A stretch of DNA of 64,000 nucleotides from IMG/VR virus record IMGVR_UViG_3300020471_000004, positions 168,693 to 232,692 of that record, one strand, 5' to 3'. A model generated the notes under the pieces. It saw only the letters and a list, made by a program, of their open reading frames with translations. It did no database searches and was not told the origin of the DNA. Position 1 is the stretch's first letter; every line of letters starts with the position of its first letter. Both the position numbers and the translations under genes were made by a program. Positions 14,889 through 61,625 of the stretch are shown here, one piece after another.

Positions 14889-15460
14889 AAGTGCCTGACC
14901 AAACTGCTGCATCAATCTGGGAACAACTTATTTCTACGCGCCCTTCTTCGGCAGTTTCTATAATGCGTAAAGGGTGGACCCCTGATCAGATAGACCAGTG
15001 TATTGCAAAGTACTACCTTAAAGAGTTTGAAGATTGCGAAGCCTACGCCAAGTCTTTTTTAATCAAATACGGACTTTATGAGGTGCCTAGCTCTGTAGTA
15101 AGGCTTACTACCGTAGCCCGAGATATTGGAGTACCTCTATACGCAGCTTACCATGCTTCTAAAAAGTTCGGTAACAGCCCAGAGCTAATTGATTGTCTAG
15201 GGCTTAGGTATATAGAAGTGTTTGATACTCATTTCGAAAGAGAGCATTTCTTTAAAACTTTCGGTATAAAAACCGATAAGGCTAAAGCTGACTTTATGGA
15301 CCTTTACTTCACGCACTACGATACTATAAAGGCTTGTGAAAAATACGGCATTGATGTTCGAGCTCGCTATACGCGCATGACTAATGCTACTGAAAAGGCA
15401 TTTAAGGAAGGCGGTAAGCTTAAAAAGAGCGATACGAACGACAAAATTTTTGAGGTGTAA
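14885..15460 (+). CDS. hypothetical protein, possible HTH
   Basis: LTTVARDIGVPLYAAY resembles an HTH; GGAG SD. Confidence 0.5.
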   Translation: MKVPDQTAASIWEQLISTRPSSAVSIMRKGWTPDQIDQCIAKYYLKEFEDCEAYAKSFLIKYGLYEVPSSVVRLTTVARDIGVPLYAAYHASKKFGNSPELIDCLGLRYIEVFDTHFEREHFFKTFGIKTDKAKADFMDLYFTHYDTIKACEKYGIDVRARYTRMTNATEKAFKEGGKLKKSDTNDKIFEV

Positions 15461-16031: not shown

Positions 16032-16371
16032 TGTATTTACGGTTATTGGGCTTTACTTGAATGCTGACTTCTACAAGGTAAATGGCGTAATAGGTTCTCA
16101 CCTGTTTGACAATTACCAGTACAACACCACTTTTCGTATGGGCAGAGCATACTTTATTAACGGAGTATGTTTCTATCCAGGATATTACGGTACTTGTGCA
16201 AAGGCACAATGGGTGTTTAACGAGCATGAAGCTAACCTAAAGTCCATTAAACGTAAATTTTGTACTGCGCCTTACGTATGACAAAACGAAAAATGGGATT
16301 GATAAGCGGCATTGTGTTTATAATTCTTTGCCTCTTGTCTGACTTACCCTCAAATAAAGAGATAACTGATC

Positions 16372-16563
16372 ATGCATGTTTATTCTGCGATTGATTGGTT
16401 AAAAGATAATATATCGGAAGTAATTGAAAACTATTTGGTGGGAGACCAGGCAAGCATGTTACTGCTGTCTAGTTTTTCAGAGTGGTGTGTTGATATGAGT
16501 TCAGAGAACTATTGTGACTTACATAATAGTGTAATGTTCTATAAGCAAGCCACATCTCACTAA
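16372..16563 (+). CDS. hypothetical protein
   Basis: last ORF of + block, overlaps the convergent gene by 4 nt. Confidence 0.35.
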   Translation: MHVYSAIDWLKDNISEVIENYLVGDQASMLLLSSFSEWCVDMSSENYCDLHNSVMFYKQATSH

Positions 16564-52228: not shown

Positions 52229-53638
52229 ATGCAATATAAAGTGCCGCGCGTAGTATGTGATGACTTTACAAATGTAGAGTTAAAAAATTCAGACAGAGCT
52301 TACTCAGGCTTTGTTATAAGTTTCTTCAATGTAGGTGAGGACCTGCCGTTTAGTAAAAATCAGACCTTAGCTGGCTTGCGTGTAGAAATGCGAAACGGTG
52401 AAATCTATAGCAACACAAGCCAACCTGTTCGGGTAATGTCTGTAGAAAAAAGCTCTAACACCAATTCTTATCTAGCCGAGTTTGCGTATATTGCCGAACC
52501 GTCTACGAACAGTGCTGATACCCAATATCTGTATTGGGCTAACAAGATACTTGAAGAAGGTGCGCATTCAGGTAACCGTACTGATACAGATACAATCAAG
52601 CTGTTTGGTGATGCACAAATGAAATTTGACCTTCGCGAAGGTCTCCCTGTTCTTACAACAAAGCAAGTTAACATAAGTGCTTTAAAGAAAGAGCTTTGCT
52701 GGTTCATGCGTGGTGAAACCAACATAAAGACTTTAGGTAGCGCAATATGGAACGCATGGTCAACTGAATCTGGTGAACTAGGTCCAGTATACGGCGAACA
52801 GTGGAGAGGCTGGTTATCGTGGCACGAAGTTCACGAGTCTCAATCTGAAAAAATAAAATTCTTAGAAGAACGAGGGTATACCAAAGGTTATCAAGTCGGT
52901 TGTTTTCTTCTATACCACAAGCGTATCGACCAAATTGCAAATCTAGTAAACGAACTAAAGACAAACCCTAATACCCGCCGTATGATCGTTACTGCCTGGA
53001 ATCCTGGTGTAGACCCAGATACCAAGCTTTCGCCTAACAAAAATGCTGAACTAGGTATGCAAGCTCTTCCTCCTTGTCACACTATTTGGCAAGTGGGCTG
53101 TACTCAGATTCCTACCCAAACAGAACGCGAAGCAGAGTGGTTACGATTACAAGCTATAAAGACCATGCATGAAATGGACGTAAGCTTTGACGAAGGCTAT
53201 GTGTTAAGTCATAACCTCTGGGCACTTCATGTTTCTGATACTGCGAAAGCAATGGACGAAACCTCAGAAGAAGTAGTCTTAAAATCTGCTCTAGACCAAG
53301 TAAATGCTCCTGAGTATTACTTAGACCTTAAGCTTTACCAACGTAGTGCTGATTGGTTCCTTGGTGTGCCCTTTAATATAGCCAGCTACGCTATGCTTGC
53401 AGAAATACTGGCAGCACACACAGGACATGTTGCGCGTAACTTCTACCACACGTTCGGCGATTTCCACATTTACGAAAACCATGTAGCGCAGATCAAGATG
53501 CAGATGCAACAAGAACACAGAGCACTGCCCCGCTGTTACATTAAACCTAAGCAAGATATAGCTTACTACACCCATGAAGATATTCATGTATTAGGTTATC
53601 AAGGCGGTATCAAGCTTACAGGTGCAGTAGCAGTATAG
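52229..53638 (+). CDS. thyA: thymidylate synthase
   Basis: LTTK, ELCWF, LGPVYG.QWR, RRMIVTAWNP, LPPCH, YQRSADWFLGVPFNIASY, GDFHIY. Confidence 0.95.
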   Translation: MQYKVPRVVCDDFTNVELKNSDRAYSGFVISFFNVGEDLPFSKNQTLAGLRVEMRNGEIYSNTSQPVRVMSVEKSSNTNSYLAEFAYIAEPSTNSADTQYLYWANKILEEGAHSGNRTDTDTIKLFGDAQMKFDLREGLPVLTTKQVNISALKKELCWFMRGETNIKTLGSAIWNAWSTESGELGPVYGEQWRGWLSWHEVHESQSEKIKFLEERGYTKGYQVGCFLLYHKRIDQIANLVNELKTNPNTRRMIVTAWNPGVDPDTKLSPNKNAELGMQALPPCHTIWQVGCTQIPTQTEREAEWLRLQAIKTMHEMDVSFDEGYVLSHNLWALHVSDTAKAMDETSEEVVLKSALDQVNAPEYYLDLKLYQRSADWFLGVPFNIASYAMLAEILAAHTGHVARNFYHTFGDFHIYENHVAQIKMQMQQEHRALPRCYIKPKQDIAYYTHEDIHVLGYQGGIKLTGAVAV

Positions 53639-53678: not shown

Positions 53679-54740
53679 ATGAATATAAAAAGTAGATCAG
53701 AGGCAATACCTCCAACATATACCCAAAGATACAGCTCTACACTAGGTTACATTGACCTACAAGAACCTACGAATACAGGCAAGTACGTTATAATGTACCA
53801 TGCCGGTTGCAATGACGGACTAGTTGGTGCAGGTATAGTGTACAAATACCTCACCTCAAACAAACGAATAGACTTAGACTATGTTAAATGCATACCTGTG
53901 TCTTACGGCAAACCAATACCTGAAATAGATGCAGAAACAGTATTGGTTTATATAGTAGACTTTGCTTATGGCCCGCAAGAGCTTTTTGAATACGCAAAAG
54001 CCAGGCCCGACACAGACTTTCTTACAATAGACCACCATGCAAGTGCCTCAGAAAAGTGGGACGGTGTTACAAACACTCCGAACAATGTGTGTACCTACAT
54101 CGATTCTAGCGGAGAATTTAGCGGTGCAGGCTTAGCGTGGGATATTCTTTATCCTGAAAAAGAAGCACCTGACTTGGTCAAAGACGTACAAGACCGAGAT
54201 TTGTGGAAGTTCAAAAGGTCAAACAGTAAAGAAGTACACCAGTATTTGCTAATGTTAACCAAAGACGACCAGTACATTCCTGAATACGTAGCTAACAAGT
54301 TTCTCAGTCCTAGACTAGAACACAGAGCGTATACTCATGCAGTCTCTCAGGGTATTCCTCTAAAGGCACAGTTCGATACCTTTATTAAAATGTCTGCCCA
54401 AAACGCTTTTGTAAGAGTTCTTACTTTGAGAAATAAAGAGTATTTGGTGGTTATGGTAAACTGCTCTATATACTCTTTTATAAGTGATACTTGTGATTAC
54501 ATTTTGGAAAACGCTGATGAATTTGGCATAAACGAAAATGACACTACTGTTATTGCTTTTAATCAATCTGACTTCGACAAAGTGAATCTTAGTTTTAGAA
54601 GCAAAAACAAAACAGCCAAAGTATTAGCAGAGCATTTTGGAGGTGGAGGTCATCCTAATGCCGCAGGTGCTAAAATAAAATATTTTGAATGGCAAATGGT
54701 AGGAAACTTATTAGACAAAGTACCTAATAAGGAGTCTTGA
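53679..54740 (+). CDS. DHH/DHHA1 phosphoesterase
   Basis: YH..CNDG, VDF, IDHH, DRDLW, GGGGHPNAAG. Confidence 0.88.
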   Translation: MNIKSRSEAIPPTYTQRYSSTLGYIDLQEPTNTGKYVIMYHAGCNDGLVGAGIVYKYLTSNKRIDLDYVKCIPVSYGKPIPEIDAETVLVYIVDFAYGPQELFEYAKARPDTDFLTIDHHASASEKWDGVTNTPNNVCTYIDSSGEFSGAGLAWDILYPEKEAPDLVKDVQDRDLWKFKRSNSKEVHQYLLMLTKDDQYIPEYVANKFLSPRLEHRAYTHAVSQGIPLKAQFDTFIKMSAQNAFVRVLTLRNKEYLVVMVNCSIYSFISDTCDYILENADEFGINENDTTVIAFNQSDFDKVNLSFRSKNKTAKVLAEHFGGGGHPNAAGAKIKYFEWQMVGNLLDKVPNKES

Positions 54741-54744
54741 CATA

Positions 54745-54912
54745 TTGTTTAAAAGTTTAGCAGGGGCATGGTTAATAATTTACTTTATTATTTGTCCCTT
54801 AGCGTCATTATTAGTTATAGCAGGAATTGCCCCAAGCTATTCATTATTAATTTCGTTAGGAGTAGTAATACTAACTATTATCAGAATAGACAAATCACTA
54901 AGCAAGGGCTAG
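54745..54912 (+). CDS. small 2-TM membrane protein (not in ORF track)
   Basis: TTG start 10 nt after TAAGGAG; FKSLAGAWLIIYFIICPLASLLVIAGIAPSYSLLISLGVVILTIIRIDKSLSKG. Confidence 0.5.
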   Translation: MFKSLAGAWLIIYFIICPLASLLVIAGIAPSYSLLISLGVVILTIIRIDKSLSKG

Positions 54913-54928
54913 CGTACTGTTAGCCCTT
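54904..54928 (+). promoter_or_regulatory. hairpin abutting the SD of the next gene
   Basis: AAGGGCTAGC/GTTAGCCCTT stem immediately before AAGGAG. Confidence 0.4.
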
Positions 54929-54941
54929 AAGGAGAATCCGG

Positions 54942-55376
54942 ATGTTAGATCTAACGGTAGAGGAAATTACCGCAAATGCTTATCAATTATTCGGACCTGA
55001 CGTAGATCCCTCTATAGTAGAGAGATATGTTCAGTCTGTCCAATCCCTAGACTTTGAAAACAAAGTTCCTTCTATTCTAAGACTTAACTCTTACGCAAAC
55101 GCCAAACAGGTGTATCAATATGCGCGACTTGATTACAATACTAAAGTAAGAGAGTTGCAAAAGATGAGCGGGGAAATACTTCATGCAGAACCAGACAAGC
55201 CTTATAGTTCCCAGTCTCAACTTCTTGACCACATAAAAAATCTTTTAAATCAAATCAAAATCGTAAACAGCAAACTTGAAACCGCTCATAGGCTTGTAGT
55301 GCCAGGACAAGACCCAAAGGTCGACCAGATAAACTCAGAGCTTGAAGAAATTTACCCTATTGTTCCCAGCGTATAG
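54942..55376 (+). CDS. hypothetical helical protein
   Basis: AAGGAG SD. Confidence 0.6.
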   Translation: MLDLTVEEITANAYQLFGPDVDPSIVERYVQSVQSLDFENKVPSILRLNSYANAKQVYQYARLDYNTKVRELQKMSGEILHAEPDKPYSSQSQLLDHIKNLLNQIKIVNSKLETAHRLVVPGQDPKVDQINSELEEIYPIVPSV

Positions 55377-55419
55377 CTATAAATCTGACAATACTAATTT
55401 ACATTTGTAATACGTTAAG

Positions 55420-55700
55420 TACTACACCGGCTGTAAACCGATTAGGAATGTCTCGGTTTGTAAGACATTATCCAGGTCAGTATTAACACATGTGCTAGGA
55501 GAGGAATAATTCAGGAGAGGGCCTGACCGCGAGATAGCATAACTTTACTGGGCAGGGATCGAACAAGAAGACATTACAAGGAACGTGAGTCTAAAGCGTA
55601 TAGATAATGCTTGCTACGTATTTAATACACAGACGCTCATCTGTCGGACGCTATACGTTTTCCAATATTGTGTTTATTGGTCTTGTTTTAACCTGCACTC
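55420..55700 (+). ncRNA. candidate structured non-coding RNA
   Basis: largest ORF-free gap in the window; multiple interlocking helices, with G-U pairs favouring the + strand. Confidence 0.55.
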
Positions 55701-55731
55701 TTTTCTTTGAGGGAAGATAGAATGGATATAC

Positions 55732-56498
55732 TTAATAGCTCTAATATGTTTAGTGAGATGCCTTCTTCACCGATCAAAGGTTTCACTTCTGAGTTGACCA
55801 ATTTCTTGGCATACACAGGAGAGAGAGGCTTCCATAGACTAGAGCTAGACAAAATAGAAATTATCTCTAACGGAATGCTTACAGGCATAATAGGGACAAG
55901 TGCTGTAGTACAAGGCACTCGTCAACTAGCTGTAGTAAGTATTGCGATAGATTTCGCACGTTTATTTCAATTGATATTCGACAAAGATCTTGTTAAAGGA
56001 ACTGCCGAAGATCCTTGCGTTATCACATTGGCTTGGTTCAAACATCACCGTGACTCCTACCTACAAAGCTTCCGAAGTCCTATCTGTTGGAACTTATCTT
56101 TATACCGAGGTGCTAGTTTAGCTAGAACAGGTACTCATGTAAACAATGCACTTAACAAAGGCATTGACCCTTCTCCTAATATCGATGACGTATTCAATCG
56201 TTACCGCAAAGGTATCGATAATCTCGGTAAAAACTGCAAAGACTACAGTGAAAAAGAATACTGTAAACTTCATAGTATGTTAGCAATGTTGTTAGAGTGC
56301 ACCAGCTTAGACTATTCTAAAATTGGTATGCACATAAACAATCTTCAATTCCTCTCTACGTTGAAAAATCAGTTATGCCAAGTCAAAGAAGGTCACGCAC
56401 CTATTCATCAGTTTGACCCCGGTCGGATTCTAAAGGTATTTAAAAAATCTTTTGATGAAAAATCATTTGAATATATTGTAGATAGTTTAAAGTTGTAA
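55732..56498 (+). CDS. hypothetical protein
   Basis: about 255-aa ORF downstream of the candidate RNA; ATG near 55722-55732 after GAGGGA (track start 55707 is TTG); exact start uncertain. Confidence 0.5.
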
Positions 56499-56510
56499 AA
56501 TCGGAGATAT

Positions 56511-56792
56511 ATGGGTTGGGAAAAAGACAAAAACCAACCTGGCTTTCTTGTTAACTCGGGCTTTTCTAATAGCAACCCGATTGACCTAAGTAAGATAACA
56601 CCAGGTAAAACAAAAGTAGGCTTACATCCGCCTAAAGGATGTTGTGGTAATACTCTTTGTATGGCAGAATATACAGTGATGGGAGTAGGAAGGTATGCAG
56701 ATAAACAAGGTGCTAAAACTATCTTGTTTAGACTGGAAGGCGGATTGTTTATAGAACACACGCAAATCAATTATATACTGACTCCTGAATAA
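56511..56792 (+). CDS. hypothetical protein
   Basis: GGAG SD, ends at terminator. Confidence 0.55.
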   Translation: MGWEKDKNQPGFLVNSGFSNSNPIDLSKITPGKTKVGLHPPKGCCGNTLCMAEYTVMGVGRYADKQGAKTILFRLEGGLFIEHTQINYILTPE

Positions 56793-56834
56793 AAATAAAG
56801 CCGGTCGCATCGTAAAAGATGGCCGGCTTTTTTT
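56791..56834. terminator. bidirectional terminator between convergent blocks
   Basis: AAAGCCGGTC...GGCCGGCTTTTTTT with an upstream A-tract. Confidence 0.8.
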
Positions 56835-56842
56835 GTGGTTCT

Positions 56843-59254
56843 TTAAAAGATTTGTACGTCACCGTCTAAGCTATATAAGTTAGTAGCTCTTTGGCTTCCT
56901 GCTCCGCGTCTTCCTCGAACAAGTCTATAAAGAATCTCACCGTTCTCGACATCTATGCCTGTTACTTCAACAGGAACAAATGCACGACCTTGCTTTATAG
57001 TATAAATAGGAGTCTGAATAAGTAACGTATTTCGTTTAGAGTATTCACGACTTAGCCTGTTTAGTTGGTTACGCTTTTGAGTAACCAGTGCAGCCTTACC
57101 TGTACTCCTTTCCAGTTCACGTAGTTCTTCAATAAGGCTAGATACCTTTGAAGTTATCGCAGACTTAACTTCAATGTTTTGGCTTATCTTTTTCAAAGCA
57201 TGGCAACGCGCTGTCTTTTCCTTAGGATAAGGTTTCATACGTGTTGCAATAGTAACGCTAATTCTAGGAGCAGAGGTTTCTGCCATGAGATCCATCTTAG
57301 CACCTAAAGCGTTACCGTAAAGCCTTTCCAGTCTACGTGTAAAGTTCTCAGCCTCTTCTATGAACTTCTTGTTCACTGTATCAGTAACCAGAACAAACGC
57401 TGCTTTGCCTGATTTAGTTTTACCAATACGTTGGTCTAACTTGGCAGTTTCTTTGGTGAATATACCTGTTAATGCTTTGTCTACCACAATTGCTTTGCGA
57501 AGCTCTTTCATTATAGAGGTTTCATTGCCAGGGTATACAAAAGCACTAGGTTCCCAATCGTCTTTGTATGCAGGAACTTCCACCGTTTCATCGTATAAAG
57601 TAACACCTTTAGGTAAGTACCCGTCTTTTACTTTACGACCTTCTTTACGTACTGCTGTAACTACAGGTCCTACCAGATAGCCTAGATTGTTCTTGTTAGA
57701 TTTCTCTAAGAAAGAAGCCTTATCACTTGAGTACTTAACAATAGTAGCAGAGCTTGCTAGGTTTGCAAATCTAGGCATAAAACGGTCTAGACGTTGACGT
57801 AGATCTTTTTCAGTAGTGTCCCACATAAACGCATATTTAGGATCGTTTGCATCGTGTCTAAAGAAAGCTACGAATACTGGATCTTTTGTGCGCTTAGTAG
57901 ATGTTTTAGGCTTAACTTCAACAGTTTCGGTGCGCATCTGAGTCAGGCTTTTAACTCCGCGTCTAACTACTTGGTCAATAGCACCATTACCCTTCAGAAG
58001 CTTAACACCTGCTCTGCGTCCTGCAAAACCTTTACTGTTCTTGATCAAAAGCTGTGCTTCTCTTTCTGAAAGAACAAACTCTTCACCATCGTGGTCTTCT
58101 ACCAAGTGTACGCCGTCTTTGTCTAGACGGATACCGAATATTTCACCTGTAGAAATAGTAGTTTCGAATTCAGGATGGTGGTCACGGTAACGTCTGTTGG
58201 TCTTGCCTACATACTTGTACCATGCATATTTGGTATAAACCAATTTCTTGGCGCTTTCTGACAGTAGACCTGTGGTGTGTTTTTGAGGAAATATTTCGCT
58301 GCTGCTTACACTCTCTGCAAAATGGATAGCGGCTTGGCGGGCCTCAGTTTGGTCAGAGATAGTGTATACACCTTGACCTTTAGGAACTTCTTCTACAAAG
58401 TTAAGTTCAGGGCGGTAGTGTCCTGTTTGGTCATGCTGAGGAGAAGTAATAATAAGCTTAAAGCCTTTATCATTCTCTGAGTCTAGGCGAACTTTGTATT
58501 CACGGTCTTCACTGCTATAAAAATTTCGCGCTTGGTCGATAGCTTCTTGTGCGTTAGATGGTCTAAAACCGCAATCGCCTTGTTTTACAGACTGACCTGG
58601 TTTGAAGCCGAACATTGCACGATGCGACCACCCGTACCATTTATTGTCCTTAGAAGAAAAACCTATGCTACAAACACGGCTATTTTCTGAAATAGGCATA
58701 GGTAGTATACCCATATTCTCGCAGATATGTTTAGCATCTTCTGGTGTACCGATATAAACACCTTCAGGGTTATACGCACTGCTCATTGTAAAAGGTTTAC
58801 CTAGTTGCAGGTTTTCGCCTACTTCAACGTATTCTTCTACAGTAGTGTAGTAGCCTTGCTTTAAAGTTGATGTATCTTGTGCTACCGTACGCTTGTACAT
58901 ATTAGGATATTCGGTAGATTCATACCCTTCCAGTTGAGCGGCAAAATCATTTGCAAAATTTTGATGTAGATTCGTAGTTTCGTTAGGTCCTGTTTCATCG
59001 TCCCATTCACTTGTGATGTTGCGACTAGGTTCCCACTGCCAGTTACCTCCAGGCTTACTAGGTATCTTTGTTTCGTTACCGATAGGCTGTAGGTTTTGAG
59101 GATCAAACATTTTATCTTCGCGCTCGATTGTAGATACTTCGCTGTGCGAAATAAATGCTTGCTGTGTTTGGAAATCGAAAAAGTATTGCTTGGTGTTCAT
59201 GCCTGACTCAGACAAAAACATTTCATTTTCAATTAAAGTAAATATATGGTGCAT
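56843..59254 (-). CDS. large multi-segment protein, probable internal head protein
   Basis: start likely MHHIFTL; LSES motifs; KWYGWSHRAMFGF segment; basic C-terminal half. Confidence 0.55.
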   Translation of the reverse strand: MHHIFTLIENEMFLSESGMNTKQYFFDFQTQQAFISHSEVSTIEREDKMFDPQNLQPIGNETKIPSKPGGNWQWEPSRNITSEWDDETGPNETTNLHQNFANDFAAQLEGYESTEYPNMYKRTVAQDTSTLKQGYYTTVEEYVEVGENLQLGKPFTMSSAYNPEGVYIGTPEDAKHICENMGILPMPISENSRVCSIGFSSKDNKWYGWSHRAMFGFKPGQSVKQGDCGFRPSNAQEAIDQARNFYSSEDREYKVRLDSENDKGFKLIITSPQHDQTGHYRPELNFVEEVPKGQGVYTISDQTEARQAAIHFAESVSSSEIFPQKHTTGLLSESAKKLVYTKYAWYKYVGKTNRRYRDHHPEFETTISTGEIFGIRLDKDGVHLVEDHDGEEFVLSEREAQLLIKNSKGFAGRRAGVKLLKGNGAIDQVVRRGVKSLTQMRTETVEVKPKTSTKRTKDPVFVAFFRHDANDPKYAFMWDTTEKDLRQRLDRFMPRFANLASSATIVKYSSDKASFLEKSNKNNLGYLVGPVVTAVRKEGRKVKDGYLPKGVTLYDETVEVPAYKDDWEPSAFVYPGNETSIMKELRKAIVVDKALTGIFTKETAKLDQRIGKTKSGKAAFVLVTDTVNKKFIEEAENFTRRLERLYGNALGAKMDLMAETSAPRISVTIATRMKPYPKEKTARCHALKKISQNIEVKSAITSKVSSLIEELRELERSTGKAALVTQKRNQLNRLSREYSKRNTLLIQTPIYTIKQGRAFVPVEVTGIDVENGEILYRLVRGRRGAGSQRATNLYSLDGDVQIF

Positions 59255-59419
59255 ACAAAGTCCATTAATCAGTTGGTACAGGCGGATTGCCTTAGTAGTC
59301 AGGCCCGAGTAGCTTGCAAGTAAACTTCTAAAGTATTGCAAGCTTTTAATATTTGTTCGGTGATTATTTCACCTTTTTACCGTAGAGTGCATTTTAACAT
59401 TACCGAATACGCGCACAAG

Positions 59420-61241: not shown

Positions 61242-61274
61242 AACTGTACCTTATATTGCTATGCAGTTAAATTA

Positions 61275-61625
61275 TTACCACAGATCTTTTAGCGCCCAAT
61301 AGGCTGCTTGAAACTTGTCTTTATAAGCCGGTGTTCCATCTTTCTTTAGGATAGCTTTGTGGCGTTTATGATATCTGTCTCTACGATCTTTATCCTTGTG
61401 CGTAGTGTAATCTTCGTAGTCTTTGTTACCATACTTTACAAGTTTGAATCGATTACCTTTCTTAGCAAGCACACAACGCTTGTGTTTAGAGCCAGTAGGA
61501 TTGTCTATTGGTTTATTCCAAGCTGTAAACTTCATTCCTTTATACTCTAACTTCTTACCGTTTTTTGTAACCTTATCTAAGGGTTGCCCTTCGGAATCTC
61601 CGCTTAGACTTAGGAATATTTTCAT
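61275..61625 (-). CDS. small basic protein (DUF5754-like)
   Basis: LVKYG..DYEDYTTHKD..RR.RY..RH...AAYWA...LW. Confidence 0.55.
   Translation of the reverse strand: MKIFLSLSGDSEGQPLDKVTKNGKKLEYKGMKFTAWNKPIDNPTGSKHKRCVLAKKGNRFKLVKYGNKDYEDYTTHKDKDRRDRYHKRHKAILKKDGTPAYKDKFQAAYWALKDLW

What the first reader, a model, noticed from the sequence alone, without database searches (positions are those of the whole stretch)
55395..55700. About 270-nt intergenic RNA with up to three pseudoknots and clustered AGGA motifs
Seen pairings: 55432-55441 TGTAAACCGA with 55453-55462 TCGGTTTGTA, crossed by 55447-55452 AATGTC with 55464-55469 GACATT (compact H-type pseudoknot). GGTCAG 55475-80 with CTGACC 55523-28, crossed by TGCTA 55493-97 with TAGCA 55535-39. 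Long-range GCAGG..GAACAAGA 55552-68 with TCTTGTTT..CCTGC 55681-96, enclosing AAAGCGTATAG 55593-603 with CTATACGTTTT 55651-61, a possible crossing TGAGTCT/AGAC(G)CTCA, and hairpin CCAATA/TATTGG 55662-80. G-U pairs favour the + strand, and a TAATTT motif lies at 55395. Five AGGA motifs lie in 55444-55582. Inference: an unclassified phage ncRNA; alternatives are a CsrA/RsmA sponge, a cis-regulatory leader, or the RNA partner of the downstream ~255-aa unknown protein.
Basis: partly seen in the sequence, partly recalled or inferred. Interest (0 to 1): 0.72.

Follow-up and report, generated by a model that had tools for sequence, protein, structure and literature searches.

The report
New structured RNA of marine jumbo phages
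The gap at 55377-55721 encodes a roughly 295-base, elaborately folded non-coding RNA that is kept in at least eight lineages of NCTB-like marine jumbo phages, is seen in ocean metatranscriptomes, matches no described RNA family, and has no known function.

Summary
The finding is real. Comparison with seven other phage lineages confirms most of them: the 5' H-type pseudoknot (core 5 + 6 pairs), TGCTA/TAGCA, the long-range closing helix, and the helices inside it. Two of the three proposed pseudoknots fail. GGTCAG/CTGACC is broken in the closest relatives and clashes with a covarying hairpin. TGAGTCT/AGAC(G)CTCA re-uses a strand of a covarying hairpin.

The RNA lies on the + strand, starts near 55405 behind a conserved box (TACTAATTTA) and ends near 55700. 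It consists of a 5' hairpin, the pseudoknot, a three-tier stem (P2-P4), and a four-way junction closed by P5.

Support:
- Covariation is strong: 191 of 203 anchored pairs are standard, against 137.5 ± 3.9 when partner strands are swapped between lineages.
- The RNA is 96-99% identical to a relative whose flanking genes are about 89% identical.
- There is one copy per genome.
- In three marine metatranscriptome runs, only this part of a 2.1-kb stretch was recovered.

Rfam 15 has no match. GGA motifs are neither enriched nor conserved, apart from one A-N-GGA hairpin loop, so it is not a CsrA sponge of the CsrB type. The 258-aa gene is absent in most lineages, so it is not an obligate partner. 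Function is unknown. My best guess is a stable protein-binding RNA; a cis-acting leader is the main rival.

The parts
55392..55401 (+). Conserved promoter-like box TACTAATTTA.
   Evidence: The same box precedes the RNA in NCTB, L015, L017 and L025 (CACTAATTT in L020). TA[CA]TAATTT occurs 6 times in the 232-kb genome, 5 of them intergenic against 0.5 expected. Its role as a promoter is inferred.
55405..55700 (+). The inferred non-coding RNA, about 295 nt. The 5' end is placed from a transcript contig; the 3' end is not mapped.
   Evidence: The X3 RNA-library contig reaches 55405-55407, 5-7 nt after the box. Contigs cover 55407-55601 and nothing else in 54700-56800. The conserved structure ends at 55696.
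55407..55425 (+). P1, a 5'-terminal hairpin (55407-13 with 55419-25).
   Evidence: Present in the minimum-energy fold. Relatives have a different hairpin at this place. No covariation test was done.
55437..55469 (+). PK1, an H-type pseudoknot. S1 is 55437-41/55453-57, loop 1 is UUAGG, S2 is 55447-52/55464-69, and loop 3 is A-rich (55458-63).
   Evidence: On a structure-blind MAFFT alignment of 7 sequences, 93% of cells pair, 7 of 11 pairs change on both sides, 0 of 500 shuffles reach this, and slid controls give 24-46%.
55470..55477 (+). Conserved single-stranded linker AUCCAGGU (family consensus YCAGAAC).
   Evidence: Alignments.
55478..55550 (+). Three-tier stem: P2 55478-82/55546-50, P3 55493-97/55535-39, P4 55511-15/55522-26.
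   Evidence: P2 has 4.88 of 5 pairs in cis against 2.41 across lineages, with 3-4 pair types per position at positions 2-5. P3 and P4 have compensatory changes in NCTB and L015.
55552..55696 (+). 3' domain. P5a is 55552-56/55692-96. The conserved internal loop is GAUC (55557-60) opposite UAA (55689-91). P5b is 55561-68/55681-88. Together they close a four-way junction of P6, P7 and P8.
   Evidence: Covariance models find it in L015, L025, NCTB, L021 and L022 at the syntenic place. 95.5% of cells pair and 30 pairs change on both sides.
55569..55592 (+). P6 hairpin (55569-72/55589-92 and 55574-77/55585-88, with A55573 bulged). Its loop AAGGAAC carries the only GGA kept in all lineages.
   Evidence: The ACA-W-GGA-W motif is present in all lineages. 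The stem covaries, though L002 has one broken pair.
55593..55661 (+). P7, with base helix 55593-603/55651-61. Its interior varies in sequence and length between lineages.
   Evidence: G-U in the window becomes A-U in L002. Equivalent helices of different sequence occur in NCTB, L015 and L025.
55662..55680 (+). P8 hairpin (55662-67/55675-80).
   Evidence: It is missing or merged in L025.
55699..55717 (+). Hairpin UCUUUUCU/AGGGAAGA that would cover the ribosome-binding site of the 258-aa ORF (ATG at 55722).
   Evidence: Present in the minimum-energy fold. Pairing is kept in L002 through U-A/U-G changes, which is weak evidence because pyrimidine and purine runs pair in any case.

Best explanation
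SHOWN. The gap encodes one copy of a + strand non-coding RNA of about 295 nt. It belongs to a previously undescribed family confined, so far, to NCTB-like marine jumbo phages. It folds into a 5' hairpin, an H-type pseudoknot, a three-tier stem, and a four-way junction closed by a long-range helix that carries a conserved GAUC/UAA internal loop. It is present in environmental RNA libraries where its flanking genes are not detected.

INFERRED. It is transcribed from the conserved TACTAATTTA box, starting near 55405.

INFERRED, and my choice among the untested mechanisms. It accumulates as a stable RNA that acts through its tertiary fold. It would bind one or more proteins of the phage or host, as a scaffold or decoy, through its invariant unpaired nucleotides: the UUAGG loop, the YCAGAAC linker, the GAUC/UAA loop and the A-N-GGA hairpin loop. 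In this phage, which has no second box, the same transcript probably runs on into the 258-aa and 93-aa genes, so the RNA doubles as their leader.
For: Homology and position:
- The RNA lies in the same syntenic gap in eight lineages whose proteins are only 27-50% identical to those of the window.
- Covariance models built from the window clade alone find the 3' domain in L015 (E 2e-7) and L025 (8e-5). The rebuilt model finds NCTB (2e-9), L021 (2e-5) and L022 (0.1). The 5'-domain model finds NCTB (5e-5), L015 (8e-4) and L020 (0.01), directly adjacent to the 3' domain.
- There is one copy per genome in three phage records.

Structure:
- Helix strands fixed by conserved anchors give 191 of 203 standard pairs. 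Swapping partner strands between lineages gives a mean of 137.5 (sd 3.9, maximum 151) over 1854 derangements.
- Pair counts on alignments exceed all 500 shuffles and all slid controls.

Strand: the first pair of P5b is G-U in 6 of 8 lineages, and S2 has G-U in four. These would be C-A mismatches on the other strand.

Selection: 96-99% identity to L002 inside the RNA, against about 89% in the flanking genes.

Expression: three marine metatranscriptome runs yield contigs only at 55407-55601, at 99% identity or more, and none over the four flanking ORFs.

Against a single cis target: the next gene differs between lineages, and NCTB and L015 have a second box between the RNA and the 93-aa gene.
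Against: - No binding partner is identified and nothing ties the RNA to a pathway.
- The 3' end is unmapped and there is no intrinsic terminator.
- In the window, L025, L022 and L017 the next ORF starts 9-25 nt after P5, so the RNA is physically a leader there.
- The RNA-library contigs are unstranded Logan contigs of about 170 nt at low depth (2-11.5). They come from two samples of one study and cover only the 5' two thirds.
- The minimum-energy z-score is ordinary (-0.65).
- Helix strands in L017 and L020 were placed by eye, and neither lineage was found by the 3'-domain model.
- The alignments behind one search were fitted to the model and include one chance row.
Confidence: 0.5

Rival explanations
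1. It is a cis-acting leader, riboswitch-like or protein-responsive. The fold senses a signal and controls translation or read-through of the genes that follow. The abundant short RNA is the terminated or processed leader.
For: - The next ORF starts 25 nt (window), 22 nt (L025), 17 nt (L022) or 9 nt (L017) after P5.
- A hairpin covers the ribosome-binding site in the window.
- In L025 the 3' strand of P5b (UCUAAU) is complementary to AUUAGA at the ribosome-binding site, the usual logic of an expression platform (read).
- Many invariant junction nucleotides suit a ligand pocket.
- Leaders are often the most abundant part of a locus in RNA-seq.
Against: - The downstream genes are of at least four unrelated kinds: the 258/266-aa family, a 228-aa ORF, an 82-aa ORF, and the 93-aa family.
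- In NCTB and L015 about 100 nt and a second copy of the box separate the RNA from the next gene; L020 and L021 have a variant of the box (TACTTATTT, TAATAATTT) about 15-70 nt after the RNA.
- No riboswitch family matches.
- 295 nt is large for an aptamer.
Confidence: 0.25
2. It is a decoy for a CsrA/RsmA-family regulator. The conserved A-N-GGA loop of P6, perhaps with the GGA of loop 1 or of GGAUC, would titrate the host's CsrA.
For: - P6 presents a GGA-centred loop of 6-7 nt (AAGGAAC in the window, AUGGAU in NCTB, AAGGAA in L015) closed by C-G and A-U.
- The NCTB sequence UACAUGGAUGU differs at one position from the SELEX consensus RUACARGGAUGU, which I quote from memory (sequences).
- GGA in this loop is invariant in all lineages.
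- A second GGA lies 24 nt upstream in half of the lineages.
Against: - GGA is not enriched in any homologue: 3-8 per RNA, p = 0.07-0.88.
- Four of the five AGGA in the window are not conserved.
- Known sponges are arrays of GGA hairpins, not a pseudoknot plus multi-helix junctions.
- The host, and whether it has CsrA, is unknown.
- The strong conservation outside GGA is left unexplained.
Confidence: 0.08
3. It is a ribozyme, either self-processing or acting on another RNA. The conserved junction nucleotides would form an active site.
For: - Its size, the pseudoknot, the multi-helix junction and the many invariant unpaired nucleotides are typical of catalytic RNAs.
- The transcript contigs end inside the RNA, at 55573 and 55601.
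Against: - No match to any ribozyme family in Rfam 15.
- It does not interrupt a gene.
- The contig ends are as well explained by assembly and by polymorphic sites near 55572 and 55597.
Confidence: 0.07
4. It is not an RNA: a DNA-level element (origin, packaging or recombination site), a missed small protein gene, or chance complementarity.
For: - A 37-aa ORF with a hydrophobic stretch lies at 55607-55720.
- The minimum-energy fold is no better than shuffles.
- The weak reverse-strand model matches are expected for any helical element.
Against: - The ORF is not kept in any other lineage, and a 1-nt deletion changes its frame in L002.
- Compensatory changes keep pairing while the sequence changes, and G-U pairs mark one strand.
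- The model scores 188 bits on the + strand against 23 bits on the - strand.
- RNA-library contigs are confined to the element.
- There are no tandem repeats.
Confidence: 0.03

Closest known systems
Large orphan structured RNAs of bacteria and phages (GOLLD, ROOL, HEARO, raiA-type motifs)
   Same: A few hundred nucleotides, several helices and a pseudoknot supported by covariation, conserved junction nucleotides, phage-borne, and found by comparative analysis without a known function.
   Different: No sequence or structure match to any of them (Rfam 15). It is smaller than GOLLD and ROOL. So far it is restricted to one clade of marine jumbo phages, with one copy at a fixed syntenic place.
CsrB/RsmY/RsmZ sponges of CsrA/RsmA
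   Same: One conserved hairpin with an A-N-GGA loop closed by C-G resembles a high-affinity CsrA site.
   Different: There is only one conserved GGA site and no enrichment of GGA. The architecture is dominated by a pseudoknot and a four-way junction rather than an array of GGA hairpins.
tmRNA (reported in some huge phages)
   Same: About 300 nt, contains a pseudoknot, and has a long-range helix.
   Different: ARAGORN finds none and no Rfam tmRNA model matches. There is no tRNA-like end and no conserved tag reading frame: the frame after PK1 is closed early by UAG in NCTB (read). The long-range helix closes only the 3' domain.
Riboswitch leaders with pseudoknots (THF, ZTP, preQ1, cobalamin classes)
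   Same: It lies upstream of an ORF, has a ribosome-binding-site hairpin in this phage, contains a pseudoknot and conserved junction nucleotides, and sits in a folate/thymidylate gene neighbourhood.
   Different: No model matches. Downstream genes are unrelated between lineages, and in several lineages a second promoter-like box intervenes.

Membership tests
Any Rfam 15 family | Score at or above the family's gathering threshold, or a repeated weak hit to one family in several homologues | tested here: not met
   There are 0 hits in the whole window at gathering thresholds. At E up to 10 only chance-level hits appear, to different, mostly eukaryotic families, in the window, NCTB, L021 and L015.
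H-type RNA pseudoknot | Two helices in which the loop of the first pairs with sequence 3' of it, each supported by compensatory change | tested here: met
   S1 and S2 on a MAFFT alignment of 7 sequences: 93.2% paired, 7 of 11 pairs with changes on both sides, 0 of 500 shuffles.
CsrA/RsmA sponge RNA (CsrB, RsmY, RsmZ type) | Many GGA motifs, far above chance, mostly in hairpin loops and conserved among homologues | tested here: not met
   There are 3-8 GGA per homologue, as expected from composition. Only the P6-loop GGA is conserved in all.
CsrA/RsmA sponge RNA (CsrB, RsmY, RsmZ type) | Binds CsrA and relieves its targets | not testable with these tools
   This needs a gel shift or in-vivo titration. 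The host is unknown.
tmRNA | tRNA-like domain formed by the 5' and 3' ends, plus a tag reading frame after pseudoknot 1 | tested here: not met
   ARAGORN finds no tmRNA or tRNA in the window. There is no Rfam tmRNA hit. No frame after PK1 is conserved.
Riboswitch or cis-regulatory leader | Constant position upstream of functionally related genes, with an expression platform | tested here: inconclusive
   A ribosome-binding-site hairpin is present here, and an ORF abuts the RNA in four lineages. But the downstream genes are unrelated, and four lineages have a second box (exact in NCTB and L015, a variant in L020 and L021) and a 15-110-nt spacer before the next gene.
Group I intron | Interrupts a gene, with a conserved P3-P7 core | tested here: not met
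   It is intergenic and its flanking ORFs differ between lineages. There is no Rfam hit.
CRISPR repeat or repeat-mimic RNA | Match to a repeat family; repeat units | tested here: not met
   The only hit is to CRISPR-DR13 on the - strand: 21.4 bits against a threshold of 37, E = 1. It is a single copy with no tandem repeats.
Type III antitoxin RNA (ToxI-like) | Tandem repeats of a roughly 36-nt pseudoknotted unit next to a toxin gene | tested here: not met
   Tandem Repeats Finder reports none in 55200-55900.

The most novel reading that the evidence does not exclude
This is the first member of a new functional class of large phage RNA. It could be a catalytic RNA, a sensor of a nucleotide or folate-pathway metabolite, or an RNA decoy against a host defence or host regulator. 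It is made at high level by a widespread clade of marine jumbo phages, from a gene cluster that also holds Tad6- and Acb1-type counter-defence genes.
Probability: 0.15. Interest if true: 0.85.

Novelty: new variant of a known kind. Interest (0 to 1): 0.62.

Why it matters
Large, intricately folded non-coding RNAs are rare, and those whose function has been worked out have mostly proved to be ribozymes, ligand sensors or cores of RNA-protein machines.

This one is a new family with solid comparative support. It is under stronger sequence constraint than its neighbouring genes and is visible in ocean metatranscriptomes. Near-identical copies turn up in marine, reef and estuary metagenomes from more than ten studies.

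It gives a concrete, testable handle on RNA-based biology in jumbo phages that have no cultured representative. It also corrects annotation: the 297-aa gene call in relative L002 swallows part of the RNA.

Tried and rejected
Searches that found nothing new:
- BLAST of the region against 50,697 phage records: no match.
- Relatives of the 258-aa and 144-aa proteins in IMG/VR: none.
- Word-based protein searches: only the same clade.
- Exact-pattern scans. IMG/VR gave nothing, or one GC-rich chance hit. The metagenome scan returned only a contig identical to the window.

What did work was synteny through the Tad6-domain protein.

Methods that fell short:
- The first covariance model with default filters found only the window clade. 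Switching the filters off and rebuilding the model was needed.
- mafft-qinsi could not run.

Ideas rejected:
- A conserved small ORF.
- tmRNA.
- A CRISPR repeat.
- Tandem repeats.
- GGA enrichment.
- A general sigma-70 promoter at the 5' end. The scan lists none there; the one + strand hit lies inside the RNA.
- Paralogues in the same genome.
- Presence in the cultured relatives PaBG, Lu11, Y3 and JA29: no hit with either model, although NCTB is found by the same route.

Leads with no result:
- Atlas look-ups of the 93-aa and 258-aa proteins gave only leads below 0.8.
- Literature searches found no earlier description. The NCTB genome paper itself is not in the library.

I did not run complex prediction, because any GGA hairpin would be expected to dock on CsrA.

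Full report
WHERE THE WINDOW COMES FROM. The window is the last 64 kb of a 232,692-bp IMG/VR virus record. It is a jumbo myovirus. Its large terminase is 74.5% identical to that of Phage NCTB (LT598654) and about 48% identical to those of Erwinia, Dickeya and Yersinia jumbo phages. That places it in the group that PMC7412058 calls 'Lupandier'.

The finding lies in the gap 55377-55721, between a 144-aa ORF (54942-55376) and an ORF whose ATG is at 55722 (258 aa). Upstream lie dCMP deaminase, an SspB-like protein, thymidylate synthase and a DHH phosphoesterase. Downstream lie a 93-aa ORF and, converging on it, an 832-aa ORF with a Tad6 domain.

CHECK OF THE OBSERVATION. Folding energy alone does not single the region out. 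The z-score is -1.72 for the + strand of the gap, -1.33 for the - strand, and -0.65 for the 296-nt transcript I infer. Rfam 15 gives nothing at gathering thresholds for the whole window. At E up to 10 it gives only chance-level hits.

CLOSE RELATIVES. Close relatives came from the 258-aa protein. L004 and L005 (TARA) are nearly identical to the window. L002 and L003 differ by about 11% in the flanking genes but by only 1-4% inside the gap. That is purifying selection on the nucleotide sequence itself.

The few differences are informative:
- G55597 to A turns a G-U into an A-U in P7.
- G55476 is A in every relative, which breaks GGTCAG/CTGACC.

DISTANT RELATIVES. Reading the NCTB record downstream of its DHH gene showed, between DHFR and the homologue of the 93-aa gene, a stretch that shares three blocks with the window: TACTAATTTA, CCGATTAG...TGTCTCGG and GGATCGAACA...TACA.GGA.

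An exhaustive HMMER search with the 832-aa protein gave six further full-length representatives at 36-40% identity. Their contigs all have a gap of 340-610 nt at the same syntenic place, and that gap contains the RNA.

Counting the window clade as two (window/L004 and L002), there are nine distinct sequences from eight lineages: window, L002, NCTB, L015, L017, L020, L021, L022, and L025 (identical but for one base to IMG/VR L027).

Independent detection by covariance models:
- A model of the 3' domain built from the window clade alone found L015 (E 2e-7) and L025 (8e-5) at exactly those places.
- Rebuilt from those four sequences, it found NCTB (2e-9), L021 (2e-5) and L022 (0.1).
- A model of the 5' domain found NCTB (5e-5), L015 (8e-4) and L020 (0.01), immediately upstream of the 3' domain.
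- L017 and L020 escape the 3' model because their internal loop has diverged. I placed their helices by eye.

Each of three whole phage records has exactly one copy. Two other jumbo records, and PaBG, Lu11, Y3 and JA29, have none at E up to 1.

STRUCTURE (window coordinates).
- P1: 55407-13/55419-25.
- PK1, an H-type pseudoknot: S1 55437-41/55453-57, loop 1 UUAGG, S2 55447-52/55464-69 directly abutting S1, and an A-rich loop 3.
- Linker AUCCAGGU.
- P2 55478-82/55546-50, enclosing P3 55493-97/55535-39, enclosing P4 55511-15/55522-26.
- P5a 55552-56/55692-96.
- An internal loop, GAUC opposite UAA.
- P5b 55561-68/55681-88.
- Inside P5b, with no unpaired linkers: P6 (55569-92, loop AAGGAAC), P7 (base 55593-603/55651-61) and P8 (55662-80).

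TESTS OF THE STRUCTURE.

(a) Anchored helix test. I fixed helix strands by their distance from conserved anchors, so there was little freedom of choice. In seven lineages 191 of 203 positions form standard pairs. When the 3' strands are exchanged between lineages the mean is 137.5 (sd 3.9, maximum 151) over all 1854 derangements. P2, P5a and S2 show three to four different standard pair types at most positions.

(b) Pseudoknot on a structure-blind alignment. On a MAFFT alignment, PK1 has 93% of cells paired, 7 of 11 pairs changed on both sides, 0 of 500 shuffles as good, and 24-46% pairing when partners are slid.

(c) The 3' domain on the model-made alignment. It gives 95.5% pairing and 30 pairs with double changes. 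Two reservations apply: that alignment is fitted to the structure, and it contains one chance row.

P3 and P4 are kept through compensatory changes in NCTB and L015.

The strand is settled by G-U pairs. The first pair of P5b is G-U in six of eight lineages, and S2 has G-U in four. The model also scores 188 bits on the + strand against 23 bits on the - strand.

WHAT FAILS.
- The AGGA cluster: GGA is not enriched in any homologue, and four of the window's five AGGA are not conserved.

One GGA is invariant, in the P6 loop. Across the family the motif reads Y-A-Y-A-W-GGA-W, and the loop is usually closed by C-G and A-U.

TRANSCRIPTION. The box TACTAATTTA (55392-55401) precedes the RNA in most lineages. 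In NCTB and L015 a second copy precedes the 93-aa gene. In this genome TA[CA]TAATTT occurs six times, five of them between genes, where 0.5 would be expected. PMC7412058 reports that phages of this group carry their own sigma factor, so a phage-specific promoter is plausible, but this is inference.

Three marine metatranscriptome runs (two samples, one study) hold contigs of about 170 nt at 55433-55601 and 55407-55573, at 99% identity or more. They hold nothing over the rest of 54700-56800. One contig ends 5-7 nt after the box. These contigs carry no strand, are shallow, and do not reach the last 100 nt, so they show presence and enrichment, not ends.

Near-identical DNA is present in marine, coral-reef and estuary metagenomes of more than ten studies.

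WHAT IT IS NOT.
- Not a small protein gene. The 37-aa ORF at 55607-55720 is not kept in any lineage and is frame-shifted in L002, where a gene caller fused it to the next gene.
- Not a tmRNA or tRNA.
- Not a CRISPR repeat. The only hit is at E = 1 on the wrong strand.
- Not a repeat array.
- Not a partner locked to the 258-aa gene. That gene has a homologue only in L025 (27% identity). It is absent next to the RNA in NCTB, L015, L017, L020, L021 and L022.

The 93-aa family is present in all lineages. But everything here is syntenic, so that co-occurrence says little. Its fold look-alikes are weak.

HOW IT MAY WORK. Shown: a conserved, transcribed, single-copy RNA with a complex fold and many invariant unpaired nucleotides. 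Everything beyond that is inference.

I favour a stable RNA that acts in trans by binding protein. The reasons are that the downstream gene is of at least four unrelated kinds, that several lineages separate the RNA from the next gene by a spacer and a second box, and that only the RNA part of the locus is recovered from RNA libraries.

The main rival is a cis-acting leader. In the window, L025, L022 and L017 the next ORF begins 9-25 nt after P5. The window has a hairpin over the ribosome-binding site. In L025 the 3' strand of P5b is complementary to the ribosome-binding site region.

A CsrA decoy is a narrower version of the first idea. It rests on a single site.

The GAUC/UAA loop recalls UAA/GAN or kink-turn-like motifs. 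In NCTB the 3' strand reads UGA, which would allow tandem G-A/A-G pairs. This is a recollection, not a test.

NOVELTY AND VERDICT. No Rfam family and no paper in the searchable library describes this RNA. It is a new family of the known general kind 'large structured orphan RNA of phages'. Interest is moderate to high because the comparative and expression evidence is unusually good for an orphan RNA, while the function remains open.

Noticed in passing
window 56843-59341 (-): An 832-aa ORF with a Tad6 (Type I Thoeris inhibitor) domain at residues 161-346 and a KMPT-N domain. Full-length homologues at 36-40% identity occur in all NCTB-like lineages. Hundreds of short Tad6-only proteins occur elsewhere.
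   Followed up: partly
window 55392-55401, 54773, 61269 (-); genome positions 2375 (-), 59027 (-): The box TA[CA]TAATTT is almost confined to intergenic DNA (5 of 6 copies). In NCTB and L015 it also precedes the 93-aa gene. It is a candidate phage-specific promoter class.
   Followed up: partly
L002:6001-6894: The relative's gene is called as 297 aa because a 1-nt deletion puts a 37-aa ORF inside the RNA in frame with the 258-aa gene. This is very likely an annotation artefact.
   Followed up: yes
window 52229-53638 (+): The thymidylate synthase is 469 aa. The Pfam match starts at residue 99 and is split in two stretches, which suggests an N-terminal extension and an insertion.
   Followed up: no
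L020:960-1424, L025:1055-1498: Acb1 (anti-CBASS nuclease) genes lie a few kb from the RNA locus in two relatives. HDOD-domain and Dam-type methylase genes are also nearby. The neighbourhood mixes nucleotide metabolism with counter-defence.
   Followed up: no
window 14889-15383, 16032-16559, 61242-61572; genome 104829-105816: Other gaps of 330-990 nt without a long ATG-started ORF exist in this genome, 36 of them at least 200 nt long. I did not examine them for further RNAs.
   Followed up: no
window 55658-55692 (-): A weak match to Rfam CRISPR-DR13 (21.4 bits, threshold 37, E = 1) overlaps hairpin P8 on the opposite strand. I judge it chance.
   Followed up: yes
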